Below, one piece after another: positions 10,700-33,734 of a stretch of 64,000 nucleotides of DNA. Every line of letters starts with the position of its first letter. The first letter of the stretch is position 1. The DNA lies in IMG/VR virus record IMGVR_UViG_3300017528_000567, positions 124,001-188,000 of that record. One strand, 5' to 3'. The notes under the pieces were generated by a model. It ran no database searches, was not told where the DNA came from, and saw nothing but the letters and a program-made list of their open reading frames with translations. Position numbers and translations under genes: made by a program.

Positions 10700-12610
10700 T
10701 CAGCCAAGAGCCGCGATCGCAGCCGCGATCGCCGCATCAACGTAGGCTCGGGTCGCGACGTCCTGTGGCCCGACAGGGTCGAGCGCGTTACTAATCACCT
10801 TATCCCCAACGTCAAACTCAGTGGCAGGGTCATCGCGGATCGTCGCGCTCACGCTGGCCCAGCTCGCCGCTGCAGGGCCACTCGCAACAAGTGCCTGCCC
10901 AGCGCTCGGAGCCACAGCGGCCGACACCACAACCACGCTTGACGCCGTACGTACCCCCGAAGCCGTACGATCATTCGACAATCTCGGGTCCACGCCTTCC
11001 ACAAGATTTCCAGCGGATGAGCCAAACGGCGGCAAGCCATGCAAATGGTCGCTCCGAGCAAGCGTCGCAGCTGAACCAACTGCGCTCGCTCCGCCTACGG
11101 TGAGCGCAAGAGCAGCGGCCGTCGCTGGTAGTGCATGCACATGGTCACTCCGAGCAAGCGTCGCAGCTGAACCAGCCGCACTCGCGCCGGCCAAGGTAAG
11201 CGCCACGGGTGTTCCAGCCCCTGGCATTGCATGCACATGATCGCTCCGAGAAAGCGAAGCCGCCGTCCCAGCTACCACTGTCGAAGCAATCAAAAGAGCT
11301 GCTGGCGCCGCAGTCACAACATCGTGTAGATGGTCAAGCCGAGATGCACTCGGCGAAGCTCCAGCGCTCGCCGTTTGAGGCTTAACGGCAGCCGGCGCGA
11401 CGTTGCTGAGGGCAAGCGGCATCTTCCATGTCGCTGTATTTGACGACGTCGCAGTAAGCACGGCGTTCGTTGCGGGCGTGTCAGCCGCAACAGTCGACAC
11501 TATTGTCTGCTGCGCCGTGCGCAGACCGGTACTCGTGCGGTCATCAAACAATCTGGGATCGTTACCTTCCGCGAACGCCCCCGCAGTCGAACCAAAAATT
11601 GGAATTTCATGTGCGTGGTCTGCGCGTGACGCTTCATCCGATGTGCCGATCGCACTGGGCTGACCTGGGATCGACCCGAGCGGATCAATTGTCGACGTGA
11701 CCCCGCCACCGCCCGCTACTGTGGTCCAGCTCGCCGCCGTAGGCCCTTGTGCCGTGAGCACCTGCCCTGCACTCGGAGCCGCCGCAGTCGACACCGAGAC
11801 GACGCCTGCCGCGGTGCGTAGCCCCGAGGCTACCCTGTCATCAGACAGTCTTTCATCATCGCCTTCCGCGAACGTCCCAGAAATTTCACCAAAAGGCGGA
11901 AGACCATGGCGGTGATCCGCATGCGGAACTTCCGTCGAGGTACCCATCACGCTCGGCTGACCTGGCACCGATGGGGTGGGGACAATCGACGTTCCGTCCT
12001 GAGTCGATGGCTGAAGGTCGACCCCCAAAGCCAATCTCGCGGACATCGAGAAAGCTCCCCCACTCACATAGATGGTAGCGAGAGACCCCAAGAAGCTGAG
12101 CGAATGAGTCTCCGTTGTGCTTCCTGGGACATTGAAGGTTGCGCCGCCGTCTTCAGTTCCGATCTCGATGTCAGCATCGCACTGAAAGTTGAAATCGCGC
12201 ATCAACGGCAAGTCGAGCTGCTGCGTCCCGATAGGTGTGCCGGCTATGAGGATAAGCCCCGTGCTAGAAATGAAGCTAGCAGGCAAAACTAGAGTCATTG
12301 CCCCAGGCGTGCCCTCTACCCCGTTGGTCACAGTCACAAACTGCATCCAGAAGGCTATCCCATCCGGGATGCCATACGACGCCGGGTCAAAAACAATGCG
12401 AATCTGATCTTCCAGCGGCTGAACACTCAACTTTTGGCGATCGACATTCGGATCGAGAAACCCAATATTCGTCGACGTAAGGAGGAGCTGAGGGGACTGG
12501 TCAAAATTCTCAGCCCACTTCAAGCGATACCCTTCAACCCCCGGGACCCTCGGGGTCATGATGTTGACCACGTTGGGAAGTCGAGGGAAGATACTAAATA
12601 GTCGTTTCAT
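10700..12610 (-). CDS. Fibre protein with repeated DHxH metal-binding-type motifs
   Basis: Six DHxH motifs; three EGxDxRLxxDRxxxGxRTA repeats; C-terminal DVATRAYVD resembles the DAATKxYVD motif of phage fibres. Confidence 0.75.
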   Translation of the reverse strand: MKRLFSIFPRLPNVVNIMTPRVPGVEGYRLKWAENFDQSPQLLLTSTNIGFLDPNVDRQKLSVQPLEDQIRIVFDPASYGIPDGIAFWMQFVTVTNGVEGTPGAMTLVLPASFISSTGLILIAGTPIGTQQLDLPLMRDFNFQCDADIEIGTEDGGATFNVPGSTTETHSLSFLGSLATIYVSGGAFSMSARLALGVDLQPSTQDGTSIVPTPSVPGQPSVMGTSTEVPHADHRHGLPPFGEISGTFAEGDDERLSDDRVASGLRTAAGVVSVSTAAAPSAGQVLTAQGPTAASWTTVAGGGGVTSTIDPLGSIPGQPSAIGTSDEASRADHAHEIPIFGSTAGAFAEGNDPRLFDDRTSTGLRTAQQTIVSTVAADTPATNAVLTATSSNTATWKMPLALSNVAPAAVKPQTASAGASPSASRLDHLHDVVTAAPAALLIASTVVAGTAASLSRSDHVHAMPGAGTPVALTLAGASAAGSAATLARSDHVHALPATAAALALTVGGASAVGSAATLARSDHLHGLPPFGSSAGNLVEGVDPRLSNDRTASGVRTASSVVVVSAAVAPSAGQALVASGPAAASWASVSATIRDDPATEFDVGDKVISNALDPVGPQDVATRAYVDAAIAAAIAALG

Positions 12611-13978: not shown

Positions 13979-15379
13979 CTAGACCTTCCAGGGATCCGAG
14001 CCCCCGCTAGCCTTCTTGAACTTGTCCTTGTACTTATCGGTGTTAGATTCCCACTCCTTCGCCTCCTCATCGGACATGTTGTCTGTAGGATCAGCCGGTT
14101 TGCCTTCTTCGAACCGTGACTCCTTCTCATCCGACGCGGATTTGAATTTGTCCTCGTACTTATCGGTATTGGCTTTCCATGCTTTGGCATCCTCTTCGGA
14201 CATGTCTTTCGTAGGATCCGCGGGCTTGCCCTCTTCGAATCTTGACTCCTTCTCATCCGACGCGGACTTGAACTTGTCCTCGTACTTATCGGTGTTGGCT
14301 TTCCATGCTTTGGCATCCTCTTCGGACATGTCTTTCGTAGGATCCGCGGGCTTACCCTCTTCGAACCGTGACTCCTTCTCATCCGACGCCAGCACCATCG
14401 AATCCATCACATCGGGCTTCAGGTAACGCCGCGCGAGCCGGACGGCCTTGCTCATACGAATGGCTAGACCTGCCACATCGCTCGCGCCGATGCTGTCACA
14501 CATGAGTCCGATCTCCGAGACGATGCTTGCCAGCTGGTCGAATGCCTGACGCATCTGGCTCCCCGAGGTGCCTCGAATATAGGCAATACGAGCAGCATCG
14601 CGGATATAATCAAAGCCAAGGGACATGTTGTATGGTCCATCAACCCCGAGGTCCCCAGCGTCGGCGGTCTTGACCCCTGCCGCCGCCTTGACCTCAAGAC
14701 TGTCTCCCAACACACGCCGGAGAATGGCCGCGAGCATTAGACGGCTCGGACGCTTCTTTTCATTGCCGAGCCCATGAGCCAGCCGACGCAGCGTTACCGC
14801 CACTTCTTGATTGGATGACGCAGTACGAACCGCGTCCCCCTCAAGGGAAGCGATCAGCCGAGTCAAAGACTCCGTATCGACATGTCCCGTCTCTTCGATC
14901 TGAGCGGCGACCCGCTTCAACTGTACTGCAGCATCTTGAACTCTCATGCGTGACTCCGGTTGTGATGACTTTCGCTTGACACGACGCACTCGGACGTCTT
15001 TCAGAGCGTCCTCCAGCTGTTCGACTTTCTCAGGTCTGAGGTCGTCTTTGATCTCTTCGTAATCCCATCGCGCTACGGCCATCGCTGCCGCATCCAATGA
15101 CTTGGTCACGCGCATCAAGGTGTCTGGGATGGCATGCAACAGATGGCCCGCGACCTCGAAAAAGTGGTCGCGGTGCTCCGACTTCTCGATCAGTTCGTTA
15201 GCCTCATCGATGTAGTTCTTGAGCTGATTAGTTCTAAGCCGAGCATCGCCAAGTTCCTCAAGGAGGAAGACAGAGATCCCCGAGGCTGTCTTGGCTTGCT
15301 TCAAGCACCGATCGTCCAATGGAACACGCTCCCAGGTCGCAAATGGGTCACGTGAGCGTTCCCACAAAGAAAACATCAC
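13979..15379 (-). CDS. Probable internal head protein with 3 x 42-aa C-terminal repeats
   Basis: Lies in the head module; KTAS, RTAS and KSAS motifs; tandem repeat. Confidence 0.65.
   Translation of the reverse strand: MMFSLWERSRDPFATWERVPLDDRCLKQAKTASGISVFLLEELGDARLRTNQLKNYIDEANELIEKSEHRDHFFEVAGHLLHAIPDTLMRVTKSLDAAAMAVARWDYEEIKDDLRPEKVEQLEDALKDVRVRRVKRKSSQPESRMRVQDAAVQLKRVAAQIEETGHVDTESLTRLIASLEGDAVRTASSNQEVAVTLRRLAHGLGNEKKRPSRLMLAAILRRVLGDSLEVKAAAGVKTADAGDLGVDGPYNMSLGFDYIRDAARIAYIRGTSGSQMRQAFDQLASIVSEIGLMCDSIGASDVAGLAIRMSKAVRLARRYLKPDVMDSMVLASDEKESRFEEGKPADPTKDMSEEDAKAWKANTDKYEDKFKSASDEKESRFEEGKPADPTKDMSEEDAKAWKANTDKYEDKFKSASDEKESRFEEGKPADPTDNMSDEEAKEWESNTDKYKDKFKKASGGSDPWKV
14009..14386 (-). 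repeat. Tandem 126-bp coding repeat x3
   Basis: Anchor tccttctcatccgacgc at 14121, 14247 and 14373 (126-bp period); unit SDEKESRFEEGKPADPTKDMSEEDAKAWKANTDKYEDKFKSA. Confidence 0.95.
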
Positions 15380-18813: not shown

Positions 18814-19695
18814 TCAGACGCGGGTGATGACCACGCGGGTCAGACCACGCGGGTTGAACGCACCGATGCCCAAGTTCTCAAAACATGAGAAACCAATCGT
18901 ACGAGCCTTCGGATCGTCTGCCGAAAGGACGGTGATCTCGGTACGAACCGGGATACGACCGAACTGCTCGGGCTCGCAGCACACGTATGTGAAGCCAGCG
19001 GGCACGAGACGTGACGTGATGATCTGAGCTCCCCAGAGAACGGCCTGGAGACCTGTCTTGAGCAACGTGGCCTGGCTCTCAATGTCCAGGATGTCGCGAC
19101 CGAACTTACGAATGTCGGCATAGTCGACCGCGTTCATGTAGATGCGGGCGACACGTAGGTCGTGACGCTCAATCTCAGCAAACGCATCAGCCAAAACAGA
19201 CGGGCTGATCGGGGCGACAACCGGAACGTCCGGGTTCGTCTGGCCGGGCAGCGTGTCGAAACCAGAGACAGCGATGCTGTCCATGATCGCAAACGTACGC
19301 TCGTCTTCCGCGGCCTGAATCTGTGCCTTCGCAAGATCCTGAGCACGCTCGATCAGATCGAAGCGACGCTCCTTGATTTGCGTGAGCGGGATCTCCGGGT
19401 TCGAGGCAATCTCGAACAGCGGGAAGATCACGCGCCGTGGCTTCTGAATCGCAAGGATGTTCTCGCCCTCTTCGCCGACAACGAACGCCGTAACATCCGG
19501 GTCCTTGTCGTAGATTGGGAGAGCGCCATCAGGCAGCTGCTCGACCAGGAAGGTCTTACGACCTACAGCCGAATAGTCGCGACGCAGACGCAGGGGCTGC
19601 ACCATCGAAGCGGCGAGCTTCTGGCGGCCTGCAGCGGTCTTAATGTACTCACTAATGACCTGCTGCTTGAGTTGATTAGAAACTTGGTGTGCCAT
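18814..19695 (-). CDS. Major capsid protein, HK97-like fold (293 aa)
   Basis: Follows the protease, scaffold and decoration genes and precedes a strong terminator; HK97-like pattern (FEIASNPEIP..IKERRFDLIERAQ; LWGAQIITSRLVP; FENLGIGAFNPRG). Confidence 0.85.
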   Translation of the reverse strand: MAHQVSNQLKQQVISEYIKTAAGRQKLAASMVQPLRLRRDYSAVGRKTFLVEQLPDGALPIYDKDPDVTAFVVGEEGENILAIQKPRRVIFPLFEIASNPEIPLTQIKERRFDLIERAQDLAKAQIQAAEDERTFAIMDSIAVSGFDTLPGQTNPDVPVVAPISPSVLADAFAEIERHDLRVARIYMNAVDYADIRKFGRDILDIESQATLLKTGLQAVLWGAQIITSRLVPAGFTYVCCEPEQFGRIPVRTEITVLSADDPKARTIGFSCFENLGIGAFNPRGLTRVVITRV

Positions 19696-19733: not shown

Positions 19734-20360
19734 TCAGACCCGGAGGTCCAGGACTAGGAGTGAGGAGTTGGCGTCCGGAGCGACCTTGACGATACCAATC
19801 ACCGTGGCAACGCCAGGGGTGATGCTGTCCAGAGAGTCAGCGATGGTGTTCGTCAGCAGACCGTTGATCGAAGCATAGAGCTTGTCACCAACGGCATATG
19901 TGAGAGCAGCAAAACCGCCCGATTGCACCTTAGTCTCATAGATCGAAACGCCAACGCATGAGCCACTGCCGGTCACGTAAGGCGCACGACCTGATGCAAC
20001 ACCCGGCGTGTTCTCGAATGCGTTACCAAGCGCATCGTTCAAGAAGATCCCGAGAGGCAGGATGCCCGCAGCCACGCCACTGGCAGCCGCAGAGGCAGCC
20101 TTGGGGCCGCCGATATAGTTATTCCCGATGTCGCGGCGCGTGAAAGCCACCGATCCACCAAGAACGCCAACCTTAGTGATGCTGGCTAGAGTTGTAGACG
20201 TGGCGCCAATCGCGAGACCCCCGGGAGGATTAGCCTGTGTGAAACCATCCGGCGATAGCAGACCGACGCTGTTGCGGGTCACTACGTGGAACAGTTGAAC
20301 ACGACCAGACGTCTCACGGAAATCACCCGAGCTTTGGCCGCCGATTGCGAAAGTAGTCAT
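19734..20360 (-). CDS. Head decoration/cement protein
   Basis: Immediately upstream of the capsid gene; YAVGDKLYASINGLLT...IGIVKVAP pattern typical of cement proteins. Confidence 0.7.
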   Translation of the reverse strand: MTTFAIGGQSSGDFRETSGRVQLFHVVTRNSVGLLSPDGFTQANPPGGLAIGATSTTLASITKVGVLGGSVAFTRRDIGNNYIGGPKAASAAASGVAAGILPLGIFLNDALGNAFENTPGVASGRAPYVTGSGSCVGVSIYETKVQSGGFAALTYAVGDKLYASINGLLTNTIADSLDSITPGVATVIGIVKVAPDANSSLLVLDLRV

Positions 20361-24171: not shown

Positions 24172-27100
24172 TCACTTAGCTAGCGGGCGACCGGAAGTAG
24201 ACTTTCCAGTGTGGACCGCCGATGACTGGTCATCCTTGTAGGCCTTCATGTACGGCTCGTCAGCCTCGGTCTGAATCGGCTGCATTGGATTCTTGAACGC
24301 GTCCATGTACTTCTCATCGGAGTCACGCTGGAGCACCTGAGCCAGCTTCCCCCGACCGATCTCGCTCGCCTGGCGATTCAGCAGCGAATCAGTCCCGTAG
24401 GTAGCGGTTTCGAGGTCATCAGCGATCTTATCGATCGCGTTCACCAGATTCTTAGCCGCCGTGAAGTCCATCCCCCACTTGCTGTGGTTAGACTGGACAA
24501 CAGAGGCCACGCGGTCCAAGCGGGCCAACAGCTTGTCGGCTTGGGCGGTCTCGAGTTGAAGTTTGTTGTTCGGCATGGTGTTCCTCGCAGTTCGTGATCT
24601 AACCGTCAGTAAGGTCTCGTCCTCAGACACGCCCGCTAGGCGCGCCAAAAGCTTGTTGTAAACAGTCGGATGGATTGCGTGGTCGTAGTTCTCAGCGCGC
24701 AATGCGAGGTCCAGTGCGGCACGCAACTGGGTGTCGCGAACAACGCCATCGATCTTCGTCGACAACGCGGGCGTGGAGAGCCACTCGCGAGCTGCCTTTA
24801 GCAGTCGGGTATAGTCCGACGCAGCCAGGTCTCTAGCCTGTGGCTGCTCCCACCCGCGGTAAGGCTCAAACCCCTCGTGGCCTTTCGGATAGGGGGCAAC
24901 ACCCCAATAGACAGCTGATCGATCCATCGGACTAGTAGCGGAATAAAAGGAAAAGGTGTGCCCCGAGCTCCTGGCCGCTACGCGCAGAGCGATGCTCTGG
25001 TCCGAGGCGAACCGAGACATGAAGCTGTCCCAAACGGCTGATGAGGCGTCCGCCAACCACTTCGGGACCTTGGCCTTCCCGGTATACCTAGGCGGCTTGA
25101 TCGGTATCTGCGGGGCTATGATGTTCGACTGGAGTAGACGATCTTCGACCTTGAGAGGTCGCTTCCCAGGTTTGCCACCAGCCTTCTTCTTCGCTTTGTA
25201 TTCCTTGAGCTCGGCGTCGTATTCCTGGGTCGCCCGTTCCTTGTGCTTTTCGTAGCCCTTGGCGGCCTTCTCATACTGTTTCAGGTCTTTGTCGTACCGC
25301 CGACTGTCATCGTGATCGAACAACTCCTGCACGGCACTCAGCTTCTCCGGCCGGAGGCCTGCGAGCTGTTTCATCACACGGTCGCGAAATGTCCGGTGCG
25401 TATCCTGGACCGTTGTGCCCTGGGGATAGCGCTTGTCCTTTTCCTCCAGATAGGCGCTGGCCTCACGGATACCTTCCGCGATTTCTTTGGGGGACTGATG
25501 CTCGGAAATGTTCTTTCCGTCCGCCGAAGTCAGAAACAGCTTCCGGGCCTGACGATAGTCATTGGCCTGGCAATAACCGACGATCAGCTTCTGCATCGCC
25601 GGATCCTTGGTCGAGCTCAAGAGCTTCTGAACCTCCTGATCTGACACTGGCGGCACAGGCGTTCTTTTATCCAAGCCTGCCTTGAACAGGTCGGAGGCCT
25701 CTTGCGTCGCCCGCTGGAAACGATCAGTGGGCATCTCTGAAAAGCTAGACAGCGCGAAGTTAGACATCACGCTTGCGAGCTCCTTGGGAGTTCCGCGCTG
25801 CTGAAAGCTACCAGCCAGCGCGTCTTGAGCCGCCAGGCTCATCGCAACGCCTTGGACTTGATGCTTACGGTTAGCTCGCGCCTTCTCGACTGGGTCCGTA
25901 ATACTATCGAAGGGGACGGTGCTCCCATCGGCCAATTCGACCGTTGTGGGAGACGCCACCGCATTCGGATCAGTGGTGTAGAATGGCGCCGCCTGTTTCA
26001 GTAGAGATTGGATATCCTTGGGGGCCGGCGTCGCCCTCGCCACATTGTAGTCTTTGATGATCTGCTGTATCTCATCCGGGTGATAGCTCGGCTTGGAGAA
26101 CATCAGCTTTTTGGCGATGTCCATCGGAAACGTCTGCATTAGAAGGCGGTCTGCCGCCGCGACTTCAGAGTGTCGGACGGGGCGCTGCGGTTGTGATGGG
26201 TCAAACTTAGGCGGGGGTTCCTCCTCGCTCTGGCTCTTGCCCTTGCCTTTACCCTTGCCTTTACCCTTGCCTGCAGGTGGCTGACCCGCGGCGGGTGCAG
26301 CGGCGCCAGGTGCTGGCGGAGCTCCGGTTGCGGGTGGGGTCGGTTGAGCCGGTGCAGCAGGAGCTCCGGGGGCTGCTCCTGGTTGCGCTGGCGCTGCACC
26401 TGGGGCTGGCGCTGCACCCGGTTGTGCAGGGGCCGCTCCTGGTTGTGCTGGGGCTGCTCCTGGAGCGGGCGCCGCGCCTGGTTCTGCGGGCGGGGTACCT
26501 TCGGCGGCAGGGGCTGGCGGGGCTCCGGGGGCCGGGCCTTTAGGCTTTTTCTGTTTCGGCTTTTTCTGCGCAGCAGCTTCTGCTTGCTCTTTTGCGGCGA
26601 GAGCGGCTTTTGTCTCTGCCAGCTCCTTGGCGATCTGGTCATATTCCGCGAGCGCCTTGAGAGCCTCCTTGATGGCAGCTCTGTCCGCCTTTGCGCCCTC
26701 CGACTTCGGATCCTCTTTCAGCTCCTCCTTAATGCCTTTCAAACGCTCTTGGAGCTGAGCACGATCTCGGCTCGTATCAACCGGCTTGGCCTCCTGCTCT
26801 GGTTCCTTAGCACCAGGTTTCTTTGGGCCTTTCTTGGGCTTCGGTGCTTCGCCTTGAACGGCAAGAACCCGCGCGAGGTCCCCCATCGTCTTGACACCCT
26901 CGGGCGGGGTCTTGCCCTGCATGAACGCCTTAGCGCTATACCCGGGGTTATTCTTAGCGAACTGGGAACTGTCCGACTCGGGCTTCCGGAATGACTTTAG
27001 GAAGCTGTCGAACTTGGGATCGTCCTTCGCCAACTCTCGCAGCGCATCACGCGCCGCCATGTCCTTCTCGACATTCCCAGGGGCCGGCGCGTCGGACTGC

Positions 27101-27516
27101 GGGGCCTTCTTCTCTTCTGGCTTAGGCTTGCCCTTTGACTTGAACGTCTCCTCTGCGGAATCGTCCGCGAGCTCATATTTACCAGGCAGCTCCTTAAGTT
27201 TGTCTTCACTGATCTGACCAACCCAGCCAGTGGCTTTGGATCGGACTTTGACCTTCTTGGCTTCGGGCTTAGTAGCCTTGGTCCCCGGAGCCGCGGCCCA
27301 CCGGCGCAAAACCCTCGCCGCGACCGACCCCCCGATGTCTTTGAAGTTCTTAGAGAGGTCCTTATCCCTACCGGCTAGGTCAGGATCGTCGTCGACTTCC
27401 ACCCGCTCCCTACGTAGGTCATGCCGTGCCGGCTTAACCTTGGGGCTCGGGCGAACAAGCCTCTCGACTTCTTCATCCTCCCGCTCTCCGCGGCTTTTCG
27501 TAGCTTCGCGATCCAT
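24172..27516 (-). CDS. Large multi-segment head-associated protein (1114 aa)
   Basis: Between the portal and protease genes; Pro/Ala linker of PAQPGAA repeats; RVLRRW and RVAAR tags. Confidence 0.7.
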   Translation of the reverse strand: MDREATKSRGEREDEEVERLVRPSPKVKPARHDLRRERVEVDDDPDLAGRDKDLSKNFKDIGGSVAARVLRRWAAAPGTKATKPEAKKVKVRSKATGWVGQISEDKLKELPGKYELADDSAEETFKSKGKPKPEEKKAPQSDAPAPGNVEKDMAARDALRELAKDDPKFDSFLKSFRKPESDSSQFAKNNPGYSAKAFMQGKTPPEGVKTMGDLARVLAVQGEAPKPKKGPKKPGAKEPEQEAKPVDTSRDRAQLQERLKGIKEELKEDPKSEGAKADRAAIKEALKALAEYDQIAKELAETKAALAAKEQAEAAAQKKPKQKKPKGPAPGAPPAPAAEGTPPAEPGAAPAPGAAPAQPGAAPAQPGAAPAPGAAPAQPGAAPGAPAAPAQPTPPATGAPPAPGAAAPAAGQPPAGKGKGKGKGKGKSQSEEEPPPKFDPSQPQRPVRHSEVAAADRLLMQTFPMDIAKKLMFSKPSYHPDEIQQIIKDYNVARATPAPKDIQSLLKQAAPFYTTDPNAVASPTTVELADGSTVPFDSITDPVEKARANRKHQVQGVAMSLAAQDALAGSFQQRGTPKELASVMSNFALSSFSEMPTDRFQRATQEASDLFKAGLDKRTPVPPVSDQEVQKLLSSTKDPAMQKLIVGYCQANDYRQARKLFLTSADGKNISEHQSPKEIAEGIREASAYLEEKDKRYPQGTTVQDTHRTFRDRVMKQLAGLRPEKLSAVQELFDHDDSRRYDKDLKQYEKAAKGYEKHKERATQEYDAELKEYKAKKKAGGKPGKRPLKVEDRLLQSNIIAPQIPIKPPRYTGKAKVPKWLADASSAVWDSFMSRFASDQSIALRVAARSSGHTFSFYSATSPMDRSAVYWGVAPYPKGHEGFEPYRGWEQPQARDLAASDYTRLLKAAREWLSTPALSTKIDGVVRDTQLRAALDLALRAENYDHAIHPTVYNKLLARLAGVSEDETLLTVRSRTARNTMPNNKLQLETAQADKLLARLDRVASVVQSNHSKWGMDFTAAKNLVNAIDKIADDLETATYGTDSLLNRQASEIGRGKLAQVLQRDSDEKYMDAFKNPMQPIQTEADEPYMKAYKDDQSSAVHTGKSTSGRPLAK

Positions 27517-27542: not shown

Positions 27543-29318
27543 TCACCCAAAGCGGTCATCGGGGGGCGCCTCTTGCTCCACCTTCTTGAGGCCAAGAGTC
27601 TTGATCAGGCGATCCGTCACGTCAGTCTTGCCGATCAGTTCAGTCGATACCGCGCCGTAGATACCGCGCATCAGCTCGTTGAACAGAGCGTCGTTGACCG
27701 TGAACAGGTCGCGCTCCAACTTCACTCTGGTGTCATCGGGGTCGATGTTGAACATCTCCAGGATGAGCGAGATATCGATCGAGCCCTTGTTGTAGAGATT
27801 GAACAGGGCGTCGTACGTGTCCTGCGAATCGCGCAAAGGCAACCGGGTGAACGAGAGGCGCGGAAACAACACAACCTCCCCGCCCCACTGGTTCTTCTCA
27901 ACGAAACCCTTACGGCGAGCCACGGGCTTGAAAATGTGCTTCTCGACATATTCCTGCAGCATCTCGCGCAGGAACATGTACCGGGTGTTGATCACCTCCA
28001 GCTTGAGGCGATCTCCCGAGTACAGTTGCTCGCCGGAGAGCAAGCTCTCTGTAACGCCAAGCCCAGCGAACAGCTGCTTATCTGTGATCTCGTACTCGCT
28101 CGAGAGGTCCAGCAGCCGGTCCTTGGACCCCATTTCCTCCCAATGGACCTCGTAGTTCGCGACGATCGAGTAGTCCGGATCCACCAGCGACAGGTCGACC
28201 TGCTCGCGTAGATCCATCACGTCGAGCTCGGAGATTTTGTCACCCCAAACGATGCGCTTCGGTGTCATGGCGCGGGATGCGATCTGCGTCTGCGCTTGCC
28301 GCAACTTCTCGCGGTACATCAAAGTGCGCAGTACGCGATCGAGAATGCTCTGACCAAGGTCCTCACCCGCACCGCGGCGACCCGCCAAGTAATAGACGAA
28401 TGAGCCCTCATCCGCGTCGGTCCCCAGTGGGATGAGCTTGCCCTGCTCTAGGTGGTTGCGCACCTCTTCCGGGATCTCGCGAACCATCTCCTCCGCGAAG
28501 TCATCGCCGGCCTTGGCTTGCTCGATGAGCGCGCGGTCGCGGTCTGCCGGGATCAACTCGACCTTCATCTTGTCGGTGAACGAATAGGTGGTGACCTTCA
28601 CCTGGTCGATCGGCAAGACGATGATCCGGTCCCATCCTCGGTAGTATTTCTGATAGTACGCGAGCTCCTGGTCCTCTCGGTCGGGCCGCTCAACCCGAGT
28701 GACGTCATCTTCTTCGACCGCTTCGCCGTCCTCGGTGACCTTCGATTTTGTCCCAACCGACTTCGAGTCAAACCCGACGTCATCGGGAACATCCACGGTC
28801 GAGTCCTCTGCGAACGAGAACACCGACCCATCCAGCCAGTAGTGGTGAACCATCGTCACCAACCGCTGAAACAGCTTGATTCGGTCGCACATCTCTTGAA
28901 AGAACCAAAGGATGTAGTTGCCGTAGTCGTGCGCGTCCTTGAATCCTTCCGGAAAGGACGTTGGCTTGGGCGTAGCAAGTCGCACCTTGGACAGCGGGAG
29001 CTCGGTATGCAGGTCGATCGATTGCCCAACGATCGGGTCCGTGTTGTAAAAGTGCCGGTAGAGCTCGCGCTTCTCGCGCAGAGACTGCGGCAACTCCAGG
29101 AAGTCGGTTGAGAGCTGCGGCGAGAAGAACTGGCCAGCTGTGGCCAGCGACGTGTTCATCGAACCGCCATCATTGGCCTTCTTCAGTCGCCGGGCCTCTC
29201 GCTCCTTCTCAGTAAGCCCGTTGACCGGGCTCTTGGCCACGTACGGGCGGCTCTGAAGCTTCGTGGTCTGGGGTAGCTGTACCCCGCGTCTAACGTTGGT
29301 GAAATCTTTTGCCATCAC
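27543..29318 (-). CDS. Portal protein
   Basis: 591 aa downstream of the terminase; portal-like N-terminus (YRHFYNTDPIVGQSIDLHTELP) and GVTESLLSG segment. Confidence 0.8.
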   Translation of the reverse strand: MMAKDFTNVRRGVQLPQTTKLQSRPYVAKSPVNGLTEKEREARRLKKANDGGSMNTSLATAGQFFSPQLSTDFLELPQSLREKRELYRHFYNTDPIVGQSIDLHTELPLSKVRLATPKPTSFPEGFKDAHDYGNYILWFFQEMCDRIKLFQRLVTMVHHYWLDGSVFSFAEDSTVDVPDDVGFDSKSVGTKSKVTEDGEAVEEDDVTRVERPDREDQELAYYQKYYRGWDRIIVLPIDQVKVTTYSFTDKMKVELIPADRDRALIEQAKAGDDFAEEMVREIPEEVRNHLEQGKLIPLGTDADEGSFVYYLAGRRGAGEDLGQSILDRVLRTLMYREKLRQAQTQIASRAMTPKRIVWGDKISELDVMDLREQVDLSLVDPDYSIVANYEVHWEEMGSKDRLLDLSSEYEITDKQLFAGLGVTESLLSGEQLYSGDRLKLEVINTRYMFLREMLQEYVEKHIFKPVARRKGFVEKNQWGGEVVLFPRLSFTRLPLRDSQDTYDALFNLYNKGSIDISLILEMFNIDPDDTRVKLERDLFTVNDALFNELMRGIYGAVSTELIGKTDVTDRLIKTLGLKKVEQEAPPDDRFG

Positions 29319-29740
29319 TCAGCACCACTTGCGTCCCCGTCCACCACTGCTTGGATGACGCCATCCGTGAGGTCTGAGTCTTCTCCATACATATTGAGCA
29401 GAGACTCCACTGGAGTGGAGGCCACGGGGGCCTGCTTGAGAGGTGGTTTGACAATAGATTCTGCAGCTGCGGGTTCAGGAGTTAGGCCCTTGAGAATCCT
29501 GGCCCCCACCGACGCTCGTTTAATCCCTTGCCCCGCCATGCCCGCAAACCGAGACCATGTCGTCGCGAACCGCATGTAAATAGCCGTGTTGTCGTTGGCC
29601 GGAGCTCGGCGCACCCGCTGGTAAAGGCTCTGAGAGAGGCCGTGGATACGTGCCACGCGAGACTGCAGCTCCTGATGGAGGGTATTGATCTCCGCGACAA
29701 TGGCAGCGGGCTCCATGCGATCGGGCGGAGTCAGATTCAT
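29315..29740 (-). CDS. Hypothetical protein upstream of the portal gene
   Basis: Start moved to ATG 29740, which overlaps the upstream stop (ATGA). Confidence 0.65.
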   Translation of the reverse strand: MNLTPPDRMEPAAIVAEINTLHQELQSRVARIHGLSQSLYQRVRRAPANDNTAIYMRFATTWSRFAGMAGQGIKRASVGARILKGLTPEPAAAESIVKPPLKQAPVASTPVESLLNMYGEDSDLTDGVIQAVVDGDASGAE

Positions 29741-30306
29741 AGACTGGTCTGAATCCCTAGGAAGAATTGATTGATCGGAGCGGGCCGCTGGATCACAAAA
29801 CCGGTGAAGAAACACGGGGCAAATGGTAGTGCCGGAGCCATCGAAGCTTCATCCTCATTGGTCCAAAGTCCACGCCGCGAGAAAAAGAGCGGGTCCTTAG
29901 GGGTATACACCAATGGAACGTAGGGGCCGCCCGCAACCCTAGACGCGTATGTGTAGCGCTCGTAGCTCGAGGTTGACATGATGGCGTTGCCGGCCATCAT
30001 CACAGCGCTGCTGGGGTGCACAAGCTGAGACCTGGTGCTGCTTACGAATTGGTCTGCCGATTCATCGCTCCCCCACAGCATGAAGCCGCCGTAGAGCCCG
30101 GTCGAATAGCTCACCACAACGTCCTGCAGCGGTGAGTCGACCCACGTAACCCCCTGACCGCCGGCCCAACCGCCCTGCAGCATGGCTTCATCAACCGTGA
30201 CAACGTGAGAGTCCCCCTTGCCAAAGATGACGCAATCCCGCGAGCGGACAATGTCTAGCCCACGGAAGTCAATTTCGAATGATCCGACTGGAGGTGGAAA
30301 GGACAT
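29737..30306 (-). CDS. Decoration-like paralogue 3
   Basis: GWAGGQG..GGFMLWGSDE..YERYT..LFFSRRGLWTNEDE. Confidence 0.7.
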   Translation of the reverse strand: MSFPPPVGSFEIDFRGLDIVRSRDCVIFGKGDSHVVTVDEAMLQGGWAGGQGVTWVDSPLQDVVVSYSTGLYGGFMLWGSDESADQFVSSTRSQLVHPSSAVMMAGNAIMSTSSYERYTYASRVAGGPYVPLVYTPKDPLFFSRRGLWTNEDEASMAPALPFAPCFFTGFVIQRPAPINQFFLGIQTSL

Positions 30307-30821
30307 TAGAGGGCCGTCTGAACCATGAGTTGAAAGTTATTCTGACTTGAAGGGGCTTGAATGACCGAGCCGATTAGGAAGCCGTTTGAGCCTCGGGGAT
30401 CGCCAGAAACGCTCCACTCGTCCTCGGGTGTCCAAAGCCCCCGTAGGCTGAATCTGAGCCGAAGCCCTACAGGGTAGTCGTTTAGAACAAGGGGGCCGGT
30501 CAGCCTCGACTGCAGCGTGTACTTCTCATAGGAGACCGTCGAGATCACCCAAGTCCCAAAGCAACACACGCCAAATGTGTACTTGATCTGGTTCCCGGTA
30601 TAGGCGATGAACTGGTCTGCGGGCTCATCTGATCCCCACAGCAGAAAGCCGCCGTATGTCCCATCAGAGTAGGTGACGAGGAAGGTGTCGGAGCTCGACG
30701 CGGTCCACGTTGCACCCGAGCCCCCGGTCCAGCCATTGGTGACCATCGCTTGGTCGACCATCACCGGCACCGACAAATCTGTGACGAGCGCAATGCACTC
30801 TCGAGTGCGTGGCAAATCCAT
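30306..30821 (-). CDS. Decoration-like paralogue 2
   Basis: GWTGGSG..GGFLLWGSDE..YEKYT..LRFSLRGLWTPEDE..IGSVIQAP. Confidence 0.7.
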   Translation of the reverse strand: MDLPRTRECIALVTDLSVPVMVDQAMVTNGWTGGSGATWTASSSDTFLVTYSDGTYGGFLLWGSDEPADQFIAYTGNQIKYTFGVCCFGTWVISTVSYEKYTLQSRLTGPLVLNDYPVGLRLRFSLRGLWTPEDEWSVSGDPRGSNGFLIGSVIQAPSSQNNFQLMVQTAL

Positions 30822-30849
30822 CAGCCAGTCCTTTCCCCGGTGTCCATCA

Positions 30850-31368
30850 TCAGATGCTCACCTGTATTCCGAGGTGCCAATTGCGCTCTTCAATGGGTCT
30901 CTGTGTGACGAATGCAATGAAATAGCTATTAGGTCCCCTCGGGTCGCCCGAGAGGGTCCACTCGTCTTCCGTGGTAAAAAGGCCGGCCAAGCTAAAGACC
31001 AGCCGGTCACTTGCGTGATAGTCGATCGGCACAAGTGGCCCGCCGCCCGTGCGCGAGGCATAGGTGTACTTTTCGTAGTTCGCCGTGGAGATCGTCCAAC
31101 CGCCAGCACCAAGGACCACGAACTTGTAGGCCGGCTGGTTCCGGGTCATGGCCGTAAAATCGTCTGAAACCTCATCGGAGCCCCAGAGTGCGAAGCCCGC
31201 ATAGAGCCCGTCTGACTTCGTGACGATAAGCCGGTCTTCAGTAGTGTTAGCCCATTGGAAGCCTTGGCCGCCTTTCCACCCACTCACAGCGTCAGCCTCG
31301 GTCACGTCAACCGTTATGGTTGCCCCCTTGAAGAACGTGATCACGTCTCGAGTGCGAGGTATTTCCAT
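30850..31368 (-). CDS. Decoration-like paralogue 1
   Basis: GWKGGQG..AGFALWGSDE..YEKYT..LVFSLAGLFTTEDE. Confidence 0.7.
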   Translation of the reverse strand: MEIPRTRDVITFFKGATITVDVTEADAVSGWKGGQGFQWANTTEDRLIVTKSDGLYAGFALWGSDEVSDDFTAMTRNQPAYKFVVLGAGGWTISTANYEKYTYASRTGGGPLVPIDYHASDRLVFSLAGLFTTEDEWTLSGDPRGPNSYFIAFVTQRPIEERNWHLGIQVSI

Positions 31369-31619
31369 TAGACAACCCTCTTGAGCTCAATTTTGCGCAT
31401 CGGCATTTTCCCCCAGGCCGTCACGACATTGCGGAGCAGCTCCAGTTGCGAATGGTCACCGTCCAACAGGGCGATCCAGGAGCCCCCAATTTGCCGAAAC
31501 ACCAGCCGAATCGACGTAAAGTCTTCCCAGCTAGGGGCCAGCTCCTCCGACACGCCGTGTTGGATCAGCTGCAAGATAACCTTGTTCGCCAGAACTGTTG
31601 GTTTCTGCTCTTGATCCAT
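31368..31619 (-). CDS. Small hypothetical protein
   Basis: 83-aa ORF translationally coupled within the operon. Confidence 0.6.
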   Translation of the reverse strand: MDQEQKPTVLANKVILQLIQHGVSEELAPSWEDFTSIRLVFRQIGGSWIALLDGDHSQLELLRNVVTAWGKMPMRKIELKRVV

Positions 31620-31646: not shown

Positions 31647-33734
31647 TCACCGGACGCCGCGGGGCGTGCGAGGTCGGACCATCCGATGCCTGGCTGCCGG
31701 GTTCCTGTCCGAGTGCAGCCCGTGGTTGCGAGCTCGCATCATCTGGTAGCGCTGCGCCGTCATCGCCCCAGTATCGGCGAGACGCATACCGGGCAAGGCC
31801 CCATAGACATACTTCTGGTTGCGCATGCGCTCCGCAGTCAGCCAGACGGCGCGAGTGAAGGCGTCACTCATATCATCGTGGTAGTCGACCCCCTGTGGGG
31901 CCGCGACCTCAACGATATTTTTGCTCTTGATCTTGGCTTCAAGCATCAGCAGCTCCTGAATGAAGGCGGAGTGCTTCTTCCCGGAGATCTCACCCATGAT
32001 GAATTTCGGGTAGTCGTACAGTAAGAGGCGCCTATCGAACATGAGCATCTTCGCGTTCTGGTAGATGCGCGATCGAAGGTCGGGGGTGAAGAACTCGCAC
32101 TTGAACTGTGTCAGCCCCTTCTTGAGCAGGGCCTGCTCAAGCGGTATCCCGTTCCAACGGTCGAAGATGCCCTCCGTGACGTAAAAACGCTTCGTGAGCT
32201 TGTAGATCCACTCCCCGATCTCATCGAACTCGAGCCGCGGGGCATCCCCCAACAGCCGGCAATAGTCGGTTGAATACTCGTTGCCAAGGTGCGGATTCGA
32301 CTTCTTCCATTCGACGCCCGCCTGCCAGACCTCGTGATAGATCAGAGTAACCTTGCCGCCAATCTCGGCCGTGATGAAGATAGCCGTGCCGTCACGCATG
32401 AGCCCGATGTCGATCCCCATCTGGTGCGGATACCGCGGAATGCCGAGATTCTGCGGGCGGTGCTCCTCCTCCACGCACGCCATGAGGTCTTCTTCCCGCT
32501 CGATCCAGCCGCGAACACGGCTGCTGAACTGAGCGCCGTGCTCGGTGAGGAACACCGCGGGGTCTTCGTGGTACTTCTGCTTGTAGTAGTCCGGCGAAAC
32601 CGTGGGGTTGATCTCCCAGGTCGGCGCCTGGATGGCGAGCATGTTCTCCGAGCCGGGGCCAGCGGACATCGCAAGGTGATACAGGTCGTAGAACTTGCCG
32701 CTCTTGTTCAAGGGCGACGAAATGGCGATGACCCTCGACTCGACGGGATAGGAGGTCCCGTCAGGCTTGAGCATCGTCATGCCCGTCTTCGGGTCTTTCG
32801 GAGAGTACGTCGCGGTCGACGGCGTCACCGAATCATAGATATCCTTGGCGCTCGACTGGCCACTATCCTGGTAGTGCGCCATCTCGTCCATGATAACCAC
32901 GGCATTGGAGTGACCGCGGAGACCCTTCGCGATGCACGATTTGAACGTGACTCGCAGCGTGGCCTTACCATTGAAGCTGACGAACTTGCCGTTTTGGTGT
33001 CGGGACGTTGGCCCGTAGCGCTCGATATCGTACGGCGTCCTAAACTTGATCTGCGACTGAGTGTTGTTGGCGATGTACGGCTTGAAGTAGTCGCACTTCG
33101 CGAGGTGAGTGGTCACCTCATTGAACAAGATACCCGCTTGGTCCTTGTCTGTTGCGACCGAGATGATCTGAATCAGGTTGCCGTTCGGAAAGCCGTAGTA
33201 GGCTTGCGGGTTGCCGAAGTTCAGCAGGCGGTAGATCTCATAGCTGGCGAAGATCGAGCTCAGGGTCGTCTTGCCACCACGGCGGCCGATCGAAAGCACC
33301 AGCTGCCGACGCTCGCGATCCTGCTCACCGATATTGCAGCGGCCCTCGTTGTGCAAGAAGGTCAGGTACTCACGCTCAGTGAAGCGGTACAGGACCTTCG
33401 TGCCGAGCATGTCTTTGATCTCAATGCTCTTCTCCGTTTCGTCCAACGGCATGAAATAGTAGAGCTTGACCAGGAAGCGCTGCACCGGGTAGAGCCGCAT
33501 CCCGAGGCCCCAACTAGACTCGATGTAGTCCAGGATGTTGAAGATCTTGGGCCGGAACGGCTTGACCTCGTCAATGACGAACTCCGCCTCTATCCCAGAC
33601 TCATCCTGTTCAGCCTGTGCTGCCGCCGCGGTCGCCGCTGCCGACTTCTGCTCGGACTCTAGTTTAGCCTGGGACGCGGCCTCTCGAATGAATCGAGCGA
33701 CGCCCTCCCCGGTTCGTTTCTTCTGCCCTGCCAC
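31647..33734 (-). CDS. terL: Terminase large subunit
   Basis: Walker A GRRGGKT, Walker B VVIMDE, coupling motif ISSP, nuclease acidic residues GIDIG and HDDMSDA. Confidence 0.93.
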   Translation of the reverse strand: MAGQKKRTGEGVARFIREAASQAKLESEQKSAAATAAAAQAEQDESGIEAEFVIDEVKPFRPKIFNILDYIESSWGLGMRLYPVQRFLVKLYYFMPLDETEKSIEIKDMLGTKVLYRFTEREYLTFLHNEGRCNIGEQDRERRQLVLSIGRRGGKTTLSSIFASYEIYRLLNFGNPQAYYGFPNGNLIQIISVATDKDQAGILFNEVTTHLAKCDYFKPYIANNTQSQIKFRTPYDIERYGPTSRHQNGKFVSFNGKATLRVTFKSCIAKGLRGHSNAVVIMDEMAHYQDSGQSSAKDIYDSVTPSTATYSPKDPKTGMTMLKPDGTSYPVESRVIAISSPLNKSGKFYDLYHLAMSAGPGSENMLAIQAPTWEINPTVSPDYYKQKYHEDPAVFLTEHGAQFSSRVRGWIEREEDLMACVEEEHRPQNLGIPRYPHQMGIDIGLMRDGTAIFITAEIGGKVTLIYHEVWQAGVEWKKSNPHLGNEYSTDYCRLLGDAPRLEFDEIGEWIYKLTKRFYVTEGIFDRWNGIPLEQALLKKGLTQFKCEFFTPDLRSRIYQNAKMLMFDRRLLLYDYPKFIMGEISGKKHSAFIQELLMLEAKIKSKNIVEVAAPQGVDYHDDMSDAFTRAVWLTAERMRNQKYVYGALPGMRLADTGAMTAQRYQMMRARNHGLHSDRNPAARHRMVRPRTPRGVR

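What the first reader, a model, noticed from the sequence alone, without database searches (positions are those of the whole stretch)
29737..31368. Three tandem paralogues that resemble the head decoration protein: four cement-type genes
Seen: the three ORFs are clearly paralogous. Their C-halves (YEKY..YPVGLRLRFSLRGLWT..IGSVIQAP..L) align by eye with the gene upstream of the capsid gene (YETK..YAVGDKLYASINGLLT..IGIVKVAP..L). They sit between terL and the portal gene rather than beside the capsid gene. Established: lambda gpD-type cement proteins are homotrimers at three-fold axes. Inference: a heterotrimer or position-specific decoration set, for example around the portal vertex.
Basis: partly seen in the sequence, partly recalled or inferred. 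Interest (0 to 1): 0.62.

Follow-up and report, generated by a model that had tools for sequence, protein, structure and literature searches.

The report
Three extra capsid-cement paralogues in a megaphage
A giant bacteriophage carries three anciently duplicated genes with the fold of capsid "cement" proteins, in addition to the usual cement gene beside its capsid gene. Relatives keep the same set of three, so the large head probably uses more than one kind of cement, although how the three assemble has not been tested.

Summary
The three minus-strand ORFs at 30850-31368, 30306-30821 and 29737-30306 are paralogues (45-49% identity, E 1e-43 to 1e-55). They lie between terL and the portal gene.

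A confident AF2 model of the middle one (pLDDT 92.9) matches only phage capsid cement/decoration proteins at the top of an unbiased PDB search (Z 11.5 to 6.4). Its best viral match is gp26, annotated as the capsid decoration protein of Bacillus phage G.

The 208-aa gene upstream of the capsid gene has the same fold, from a weaker model. Its C-terminal similarity to the trio is above chance (hhalign score 37.6 against 13.7±2.8 for shuffled controls).

New here:
- The triplication is old. Copies cluster by gene position across 77 related megaphage loci.
- The set of three persists even where the genes are dispersed.
- In some relatives the trio lies downstream of the capsid gene instead, which weakens the portal-vertex argument.
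- Codon usage groups the trio with terL and portal, and the 208-aa gene with the capsid gene.

Best reading: a non-redundant, low-abundance cement triad, either a heterotrimer or three site-specific trimers, alongside a bulk cement protein. The heterotrimer is not shown.

The parts
31647..33734 (-). Large terminase (terL), 695 aa, intein-free. It is the upstream boundary of the gene block.
   Evidence: PHROG 2 E 4.9e-19 and Pfam TerL_ATPase E 2.8e-4. Conserved neighbour of the trio in most related loci.
31368..31619 (-). Small conserved ORF (83 aa) of unknown function. Its stop overlaps the par1 start (TAATG).
   Evidence: No Pfam or PHROG match. A homologue lies between terL and the trio in most loci. 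Junction read.
30850..31368 (-). par1: cement-fold paralogue, position-1 subfamily, 172 aa.
   Evidence: 48% identical to par2, E 1e-55. Falls in the position-1 clade. Subfamily alignment A4.
30829..30838 (-). Shine-Dalgarno-like GGGGAAAGGA inside the 28-nt par1/par2 spacer, 7 nt before the par2 ATG.
   Evidence: Read directly from the sequence. Function inferred.
30306..30821 (-). par2: cement-fold paralogue, position-2 subfamily, 171 aa. This is the protein that was modelled.
   Evidence: AF2 pLDDT 92.9. VIA-align Z 11.5-8.0 to phage cement proteins. Best BFVD match is phage G gp26. 153 relatives found.
29737..30306 (-). par3: cement-fold paralogue, position-3 subfamily, 189 aa, with a clade-specific 16-residue N-terminal extension. 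Its start overlaps the par2 stop (TAATG).
   Evidence: 45% identical to par2, E 1e-43. Position-3 clade support 0.96. N-termini compared. Junction.
29315..29740 (-). Small conserved ORF, most likely 141 aa starting at the ATG at 29740 (ATGA overlap with the par3 stop). The ORF list gives a GTG start at 29815. Its stop overlaps the portal ATG (TGATG).
   Evidence: Homologues of 130-147 aa occupy the same position in relatives. No family match.
27543..29318 (-). Portal protein, about 590 aa. The likely start is the ATG at 29315.
   Evidence: phrog_16240 E 3.1e-28. Junction.
19734..20360 (-). 208-aa cement-fold protein directly upstream of the capsid gene. This is the position of lambda gpD and phage G gp26, so it is the likely bulk decoration protein.
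   Evidence: - Model pLDDT 65 overall, 74-91 across the blocks covering residues 131-208.
- VIA-align Z 8.4 to HFTV1, 7.0 to phiCD508, Pam3 and Patience, 6.5 to TW1.
- 1286 relatives; single copy in this genome.
- Codon usage groups it with the capsid gene.
18814..19695 (-). Major capsid protein (HK97-type), 293 aa.
   Evidence: phrog_2522 E 1.3e-49. 39% identical to phage G gp27, 48% to Tunturi_5 and 85% to LR745208.1.

Best explanation
par1, par2 and par3 are three anciently diverged members of one sequence family with the beta-tulip / TW1-gp56-type capsid cement (decoration) fold. They form a conserved, non-redundant triad in a clade of phage-G-like megaphages.

The most likely working:
1. 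They are accessory head proteins that assemble as trimers on local three-fold positions of the HK97-type capsid lattice.
2. They are made in roughly equal and comparatively low amounts from a translationally coupled block.
3. They act together as a 1:1:1 heterotrimer that fills a minority class of asymmetric sites, for example positions next to vertices.
4. The 208-aa cement-fold protein encoded beside the capsid gene supplies the bulk cement.

Shown: the paralogy, the fold, the age and retention of the triplication, the gene coupling and the codon-usage grouping.
Inferred: presence in the virion, trimer formation, heterotrimer stoichiometry and the sites occupied.
For: Fold
- The par2 model has pLDDT 92.9.
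- In an unbiased alignment to 48,161 PDB representatives, all 17 chains with Z >= 6.4 are phage capsid cement/decoration proteins, apart from the phi29 gp12 C-terminal fragment. Top values: HFTV1 11.5, phiBB1 11.1, Pam3 9.6, TW1 9.1, XM1 9.0.
- The next tier is herpesvirus triplex proteins and MoeA/gephyrin, the known wider beta-tulip set.
- The best BFVD match is phage G gp26 (E 2.9e-4, TM 0.61/0.63), annotated 'capsid decoration'.
- ESM Atlas neighbours carry the Phage_cement Pfam families.

Non-redundancy
- 66 of the 83 fetched loci that carry the family have three tandem copies.
- Copies cluster by position rather than by genome.
- Two-copy loci lack the middle type, and lone copies elsewhere are of the middle type.
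- A record that CheckV rates 100% complete (529 kb) has 2+1 copies, and a 372-kb record also has 2+1.

Coupling
- TAATG, TAATG, ATGA and TGATG overlaps run from the 83-aa ORF through to the portal gene.
- Gaps between the par genes are at most 10 nt in two distant relatives.

Abundance proxy
- Codon weights were trained leave-one-locus-out on the capsid gene versus terL plus portal.
- The 208-aa gene scores above the trio in 24 of 24 loci, and the capsid gene does so in 12 of 12.
- The trio is indistinguishable from terL. This also holds where the trio is not next to terL or portal.

Co-variation
- Partial correlations of distance matrices among the three are 0.56-0.59.
- The same measure for portal against each paralogue is 0.10-0.24.

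Precedent
- Mixed gpD/SHP oligomers bind lambda capsids, and herpesvirus triplexes are heterotrimers of this fold.
Against: - There is no evidence that any of the three is in virions. No cultured relative carries the family; phage G and Tunturi_5 give no sequence match.
- The complex prediction gave no verdict.
- LR745208.1, a 485-kb genome with an 85% identical capsid protein, has only one, very divergent copy. So a single member can suffice in some lineage.
- Codon usage is only a proxy for expression, and the loci compared are related to each other.
- The mirror-tree signal would also arise if the trio were exchanged between genomes as a block.
- The same fold also occurs as a C-terminal module of fibre and tailspike proteins.
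Confidence: 0.5

Rival explanations
1. Three separate homotrimers. Each paralogue trimerises with itself and occupies its own class of quasi-three-fold sites on a very large (phage-G-like, high T number) lattice. Examples are facet, edge and vertex-proximal positions.
For: - All solved phage cement proteins of this fold that I could check are described as homotrimers.
- Three old, separately conserved subfamilies fit site specialisation equally well.
- LR745208.1 manages with a single copy.
Against: - Tight stop/start overlaps point to equal dosage, whereas site classes on a large lattice differ widely in number.
- The three subfamilies share a highly conserved N-terminal motif and many invariant positions. 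That argues for similar rather than different binding environments.
Confidence: 0.25
2. The trio is the main lattice cement: a triplex-like heterotrimer at all local three-fold sites and the functional counterpart of phage G gp26. The 208-aa protein beside the capsid gene would then do something else, such as forming a second layer or a hexon-centre decoration.
For: - The best viral structural match of par2 is phage G gp26 itself, and the sizes are similar (171-189 aa against 165 aa).
- The 208-aa model is poor in its N-terminal half, so its role is less certain.
Against: - The 208-aa gene occupies the gpD/gp26 position directly upstream of the capsid gene.
- It groups with the capsid gene in codon usage, while the trio groups with terL and portal.
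- The 208-aa family is also slightly better conserved across the same contigs.
Confidence: 0.1
3. The trio are not capsid decorations. They could be small trimeric beta-tulip modules in the neck, portal collar or fibres. They could also be non-virion assembly factors or chaperones acting during head or connector assembly.
For: - The fold recurs in the phi29 gp12 C-terminal fragment (Z 7.5) and in C-terminal parts of long fibre-like proteins in BFVD.
- The genes usually lie between terL and portal, flanked by two small conserved ORFs of unknown function.
Against: - Full-length, highest-scoring matches are to free-standing cement proteins of the same size (Z 9-11.5 over 121-137 residues).
- In several relatives the trio lies downstream of the capsid gene, without terL or portal.
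Confidence: 0.1

Closest known systems
TW1 gp56-type phage cement proteins (HFTV1, phiBB1, Pam3, FCWL1, T1, XM1 gp53, Patience, E217/Pa193; Pfam Phage_cement PF22758, XM1_gp53_minor_capsid PF23982, Phage_cement_3 PF23968)
   Same: Same predicted fold over the whole chain (Z 8.0-11.5, 116-142 aligned residues). Similar size, free-standing small protein, encoded in the head module. ESM Atlas neighbours carry these Pfam families.
   Different: - No sequence match to any of these Pfam models for any of 55 family members; identity in structural alignments is 5-12%.
- Three conserved paralogues occur in addition to a fourth cement-fold gene.
- The trio is usually not adjacent to the capsid gene.
Bacillus phage G gp26, annotated as the capsid decoration protein of the only cultured megaphage of this capsid lineage
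   Same: Best viral structural match of par2 (E 2.9e-4, TM 0.61/0.63). The capsid proteins of the two phages are homologous (39% identity).
   Different: - gp26 is a single gene directly upstream of the capsid gene. That position is held here by the 208-aa protein, not by the trio.
- Profile comparison finds no sequence similarity of gp26 to either family.
- Phage G has no sequence-detectable member of the trio family.
Lambda gpD / phage 21 SHP / P74-26 gp87 (classical beta-tulip decoration proteins)
   Same: Shared beta-tulip core (Z 6.4 to P74-26 Dec and P23-45, 6.2 to SHP, about 4 to gpD). The 208-aa gene reproduces the lambda gene order, with the decoration gene just before the capsid gene.
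   Different: - More distant structurally than the TW1-type group.
- No match to Pfam HDPD.
- gpD is a single gene that forms homotrimers.
Herpesvirus triplex (Tri1/Tri2, VP19C/VP23)
   Same: Beta-tulip fold (Z about 4 for par2, 5.0 for the 208-aa model). A heterotrimer built from related chains at local three-fold sites, which is the architecture proposed for the trio.
   Different: The triplex stoichiometry is 1:2 from two genes, it is essential for assembly, and it is present at all sites. Here there are three genes, the stoichiometry is untested, and abundance is probably low.

Membership tests
Beta-tulip / TW1-type phage capsid cement (decoration) proteins, defined structurally | The fold: a five-stranded antiparallel barrel with a helix between strands 3 and 4, joined to a mixed alpha+beta subdomain (definition from the review read). 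| tested here: met
   The par2 model (pLDDT 92.9) aligns over its full length to solved cement proteins at Z 8.0-11.5. They are the only fold class at the top of an unbiased search. The weaker 208-aa model reaches Z 8.4-6.0 against the same set.
Beta-tulip / TW1-type phage capsid cement (decoration) proteins, defined structurally | Trimer bound at three-fold or quasi-three-fold positions of an HK97-type capsid through an N-terminal arm. | not testable with these tools
   No coordinates of a complex were available and the one complex job gave no verdict. The N-terminal motif (consensus M-x-E-I-x-R-x-R-D-C) is conserved in all three subfamilies. That is compatible with a binding arm but is not a test.
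Beta-tulip / TW1-type phage capsid cement (decoration) proteins, defined structurally | Presence in the virion head. | not testable with these tools
   There is no cultured phage with this family. Phage G and Tunturi_5 lack sequence-detectable members.
Pfam cement families (PF22758 Phage_cement, PF23982 XM1_gp53_minor_capsid, PF23968 Phage_cement_3, PF09956 Phage_cement_2, PF02924 HDPD) | Sequence match to the family HMM at or above its gathering score. | tested here: not met
   No member of alignment A2 (55 sequences) or A3 (47 sequences) matches any of these models, even at E <= 1. PHROGs also gives nothing. Both families are therefore new at sequence level.
Lambda gpD-like gene arrangement | Decoration gene immediately upstream of the major capsid gene. 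| tested here: not met
   Not met for the trio, which lies between terL and portal here and 5-9 kb downstream of the capsid gene in some relatives. Met for the 208-aa gene.
Heterotrimeric triplex-like cement | Different chains of the same fold in one trimer at fixed stoichiometry. | tested here: inconclusive
   The complex prediction gave no verdict. The indirect evidence is retention of one member of each subfamily, coupled translation and co-variation. All of it is compatible with a heterotrimer but does not discriminate it from three homotrimers.

The most novel reading that the evidence does not exclude
The three paralogues form an obligate ABC heterotrimer. That would make it a phage counterpart of the herpesvirus triplex, built from three genes. 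It would mark a special, asymmetric class of sites, such as the positions between one penton (or the portal) and two hexons, on a very large capsid that is otherwise cemented by a different homotrimer. This would be a two-tier cement system linked to giant capsid size.
Probability: 0.25. Interest if true: 0.7.

Novelty: new variant of a known kind. Interest (0 to 1): 0.55.

Why it matters
Decoration proteins are the main known way in which tailed phages reinforce capsids. The phage examples tabulated in the review I read are single gene products that form trimers or smaller oligomers.

A conserved set of three old paralogues plus a fourth cement-fold gene, confined to megaphages of roughly 0.4-0.66 Mb, suggests that giant heads need differentiated cement. 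It gives a concrete, cloneable set of proteins with which to test how very large capsids are stabilised. It would also test whether heterotrimeric triplex-like cement exists outside herpesviruses.

It also defines two sequence families that Pfam and PHROGs do not yet cover.

Tried and rejected
- Complex prediction of par1+par2+par3 (alignments A4-A6, partner par3) returned 'no answer'. The median score was 0.47 and the control with chain 1 replaced scored 0.45. I do not use it for or against binding. No homotrimer comparison was possible because only one job is allowed.
- Sequence searches of the PDB with both family profiles found nothing meaningful.
- Pfam and PHROGs scans of the trio, the 208-aa protein and the two small flanking ORFs found nothing.
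- Profile comparison of either family with phage G gp26 gave no signal.
- A search of phage G and Tunturi_5 with the trio profile found nothing. This says only that any counterpart there is beyond sequence detection.
- I considered that par3's N-terminal extension, which resembles the N-terminus of the 208-aa protein in alignment A1, might be a shared capsid-binding arm. The extension is confined to a subclade, so I dropped it as a general feature.
No read or RNA evidence was obtained, read laying was not used, and I did not try another route.
- Literature searches for a heterotrimeric phage cement of this fold found none. The phiBB1 procapsid paper is not held. The PDB representatives list two different cement-fold sequence clusters from that particle, so a mixed cement there is possible but unverified.
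Full report
**What is in the sequence**

All genes of this part of the window lie on the minus strand. In the direction of transcription the order is:
- terL (31647-33734)
- an 83-aa ORF (31368-31619)
- par1 (30850-31368, 172 aa)
- par2 (30306-30821, 171 aa)
- par3 (29737-30306, 189 aa)
- a small ORF that most likely starts at the ATG at 29740 (141 aa)
- the portal gene (27543-29318)
- a 1114-aa low-complexity protein
- ORFs of 239, 521 and 440 aa
- a 208-aa ORF (19734-20360)
- the major capsid gene (18814-19695)

terL, portal and capsid protein are identified by PHROG matches (E 5e-19, 3e-28 and 1e-49). The junctions are TAATG (83-aa ORF/par1), a 28-nt spacer with a GGGGAAAGGA motif (par1/par2), TAATG (par2/par3), ATGA (par3/141-aa ORF) and TGATG (141-aa ORF/portal). 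The block therefore looks translationally coupled.

- par1/par2 share 48% identity (E 1e-55) and par2/par3 share 45% (E 1e-43).
- The claimed resemblance to the 208-aa protein is not significant in pairwise BLASTP (E 0.17).
It gives probability 55%, E 1.2e-4, and probability 71%, E 3.6e-5 with larger alignments.
- As a control I shuffled the columns of the 208-aa family alignment 40 times. The scores were 13.7±2.8 (maximum 25.6) against 37.6 for the real alignment; a reversed alignment scored 13.6.
- With filters off, the trio HMM also picks the 208-aa homologues of other loci as its next, non-significant, hits.

**What the proteins are**

- Neither family matches any Pfam or PHROG model or any PDB sequence.
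- AF2 with a 55-sequence alignment gives a confident par2 model (pLDDT 92.9, pTM 0.88).
- Foldseek against the PDB returns capsid cement proteins as its leading matches (TW1 gp56, phiBB1, HFTV1, the phi29 gp8.5 base, T1, Pam3).
- A search independent of Foldseek, against 48,161 PDB representatives, gives the following Z scores:
  - HFTV1 11.5, phiBB1 11.1 and 10.5, Pam3 9.6, FCWL1 9.4
  - Patience 9.2, TW1 9.1, XM1 9.0, E217 8.7, Sf11 8.6, Adjutor 8.0
  - then phiCD508, the phi29 gp12 C-terminal fragment, phi29 gp8.5 and P23-45
  - only below these come herpesvirus triplex proteins, lambda gpD and MoeA/gephyrin
- This is the known beta-tulip set as defined in the review read.
- In BFVD the best match is gp26 of Bacillus phage G (E 2.9e-4, TM 0.61/0.63), which the phage G record annotates as capsid decoration, directly upstream of its capsid gene.
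- ESM Atlas neighbours carry the Phage_cement Pfam families.
- The 208-aa model is poor overall (pLDDT 65) but acceptable in the C-terminal part that carries the similarity (block means 74-91 across residues 131-208). It still hits the same proteins: HFTV1 Z 8.4; phiCD508, Pam3 and Patience 7.0; TW1 6.5; the HCMV triplex 5.0.
- 'Four cement-type genes' is therefore supported at the level of fold. Membership in the existing sequence families is not.

**Genomic and evolutionary context**

- The window is part of a 255-kb IMG/VR record cut from a 434-kb contig.
- Its capsid protein is 85% identical to that of the 485-kb uncultured phage LR745208.1, 48% to Tunturiibacter phage Tunturi_5 and 39% to phage G gp27. 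This is a phage-G-like megaphage.
- The trio family has 153 relatives in the word-index search. I fetched 77 loci from viral contigs. Only two hits came from 185,579 species-representative genomes, both MAG contigs.
- Of the 83 fetched loci that carry the family, 66 have three tandem copies.
- The usual context is terL, small ORF, three paralogues, small ORF, portal. This holds in contigs of 469 and 659 kb.
- In about seven loci the same ordered trio lies 5-9 kb downstream of the capsid gene, without terL or portal nearby.
- In a FastTree phylogeny of 170 distinct copies, the copies group by position in the array rather than by genome. The position-3 clade has support 0.96. The triplication therefore predates the sampled diversity and the gene order has been kept.
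- Two-copy loci lack one type. Most lack the middle type, and lone copies found elsewhere are of the middle type.
- A 529-kb record that CheckV rates 100% complete has two adjacent copies plus one 237 kb away. A 372-kb record shows the same pattern.
- The one exception is LR745208.1, which has a single copy on a very long branch whose placement is uncertain.
- This window's genome has three trio genes and one 208-aa gene.

**How it most likely works**

Steps that are shown:
- the cement fold;
- strict retention of one member of each of three old subfamilies;
- a compact, overlapping gene arrangement.

Two further computations bear on the role.

1. Codon usage.
   - I trained codon weights leave-one-locus-out on the capsid gene versus terL plus portal.
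   - The 208-aa gene, which was not used in training, scores above the trio in 24 of 24 loci. The capsid gene does so in 12 of 12.
   - The trio is indistinguishable from terL. This also holds in loci where the trio is not near terL or portal.
   - This is a proxy for expression and the loci are related to each other. It still points to the 208-aa protein as the abundant cement and to the trio as minor components.
2. Co-variation.
   - Distance matrices of the three paralogues remain correlated after removing the terL and portal signal (partial r 0.56-0.59, against 0.10-0.24 for portal with each paralogue).
   - This fits co-evolution of interacting partners. It equally fits exchange of the trio between genomes as a block.

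From this I infer a non-redundant, roughly equimolar, low-abundance cement triad that acts beside a bulk homotrimeric cement. A 1:1:1 heterotrimer would suit an asymmetric site, such as a position bordered by one vertex capsomer and two hexons. Heterotrimers of this fold exist in herpesviruses, and mixed gpD/SHP oligomers bind lambda capsids. None of this shows that a heterotrimer forms here, and the only complex job gave no verdict.

**Rivals**

- Three separate homotrimers, each for its own class of sites.
- The trio as the main triplex-like cement, with the 208-aa protein doing something else.
- A non-capsid role as a neck or fibre module or as an assembly factor.

Their evidence is listed in the rival entries. 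It remains possible but has no particular support.

**Comparison with what is known, and novelty**

- The closest structural relatives are TW1-gp56-type cement proteins and phage G gp26. The classical gpD/SHP/P74-26 group is more distant.
- The decoration-protein review and four literature searches gave no example of a conserved three-gene cement set in a phage. The search was limited and the phiBB1 procapsid paper is not held. The PDB representatives list two different cement-fold sequence clusters from that particle, so mixed cement may have a precedent there.
- I classify the finding as a new variant of a known kind: known fold and probable role, but an unusual, conserved four-gene cement repertoire in megaphages and two sequence families not yet in Pfam or PHROGs.

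**Limits**

- There are no virion, expression or binding data.
- The 208-aa model is weak in its N-terminal half.
- The tree is a FastTree estimate with midpoint rooting.

Noticed in passing
whole window; G000:C1:124001-188000: IMG/VR labels the 255-kb record a provirus, cut from a 434-kb contig (CheckV completeness 54%). The capsid protein, however, groups with phage G, Tunturi_5 and the 485-kb LR745208.1. All the annotated genes I examined (about 10-42 kb) are on one strand, GC skew is almost uniformly negative across the window, and there are no tRNAs. It looks like a free megaphage genome rather than a prophage.
   Followed up: partly
L005:5752-9174; also L020, L029, L040, L042, L046, L052, L066 (terL) and L021, L032, L052, L056 (portal): In many relatives terL is about 1100-1140 aa; in L005 it carries Intein_splicing and LAGLIDADG domains. 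Some portal genes are about 1090-1120 aa, which suggests inteins there too. The window's terL (695 aa) and portal (591 aa) are of the short form.
   Followed up: partly
window 29315-29815 and 29315-29318: The ORF listed as 166 aa with a GTG start overlaps par3 by 79 nt. An ATG at 29740 gives 141 aa with an ATGA overlap, matching homologues of 130-147 aa. The portal gene probably starts at the ATG at 29315 (TGATG overlap) rather than the GTG at 29318.
   Followed up: yes
window 29737-30306, N-terminus of par3; compare 19734-20360: par3 has a 16-residue N-terminal extension (P-F-P-P-P-x-G-S-F-x-I-D-F-x-G). It is conserved only in a subclade of relatives, with a shorter I-D-F-x-G-I-D form in others. 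MAFFT aligns it with the conserved G-x-S-S-G-D-F-R motif at the N-terminus of the 208-aa protein. It could be a shared capsid-binding arm or chance.
   Followed up: partly
LR745208.1 387122-387649 (L010:11842-12408): This 485-kb phage has an 85% identical capsid protein. Its 208-aa-family homologue is only 45% identical, and its single trio-family copy is very divergent (branch length 1.2) and sits in a rearranged neighbourhood. Whether one copy is the ancestral state or a reduction is open.
   Followed up: partly
window 24172-27516: The 1114-aa ORF just downstream of the portal gene has long Pro/Ala/Gly-rich repeats and a (GK)n run. It has no Pfam match. It is conserved in position but very variable in length (about 310-1360 aa) among relatives.
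   Followed up: no
window 13979-15379: The 466-aa ORF ends with three near-identical tandem repeats of about 42 residues, each starting S-D-E-K-E-S-R-F-E-E-G-K. This is seen directly in the translation. Its only Pfam hit is a marginal OAS1_C match with no significant stretch.
   Followed up: no
window 10700-12610: The 636-aa ORF carries a motif repeated about eight times, of the form (S/A)-R-x-D-H-x-H followed by a short variable segment. It is rich in Ala, Ser and Thr and is probably a fibre protein. This is seen directly in the translation.
   Followed up: no
window 31368-31619 and homologues (e.g. L026:8396, L030:8391): The 83-aa ORF upstream of par1 corresponds in a subset of relatives to ORFs of about 345-356 aa. 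These lengths come from longest-ORF calls and may include upstream extension. Function unknown.
   Followed up: no
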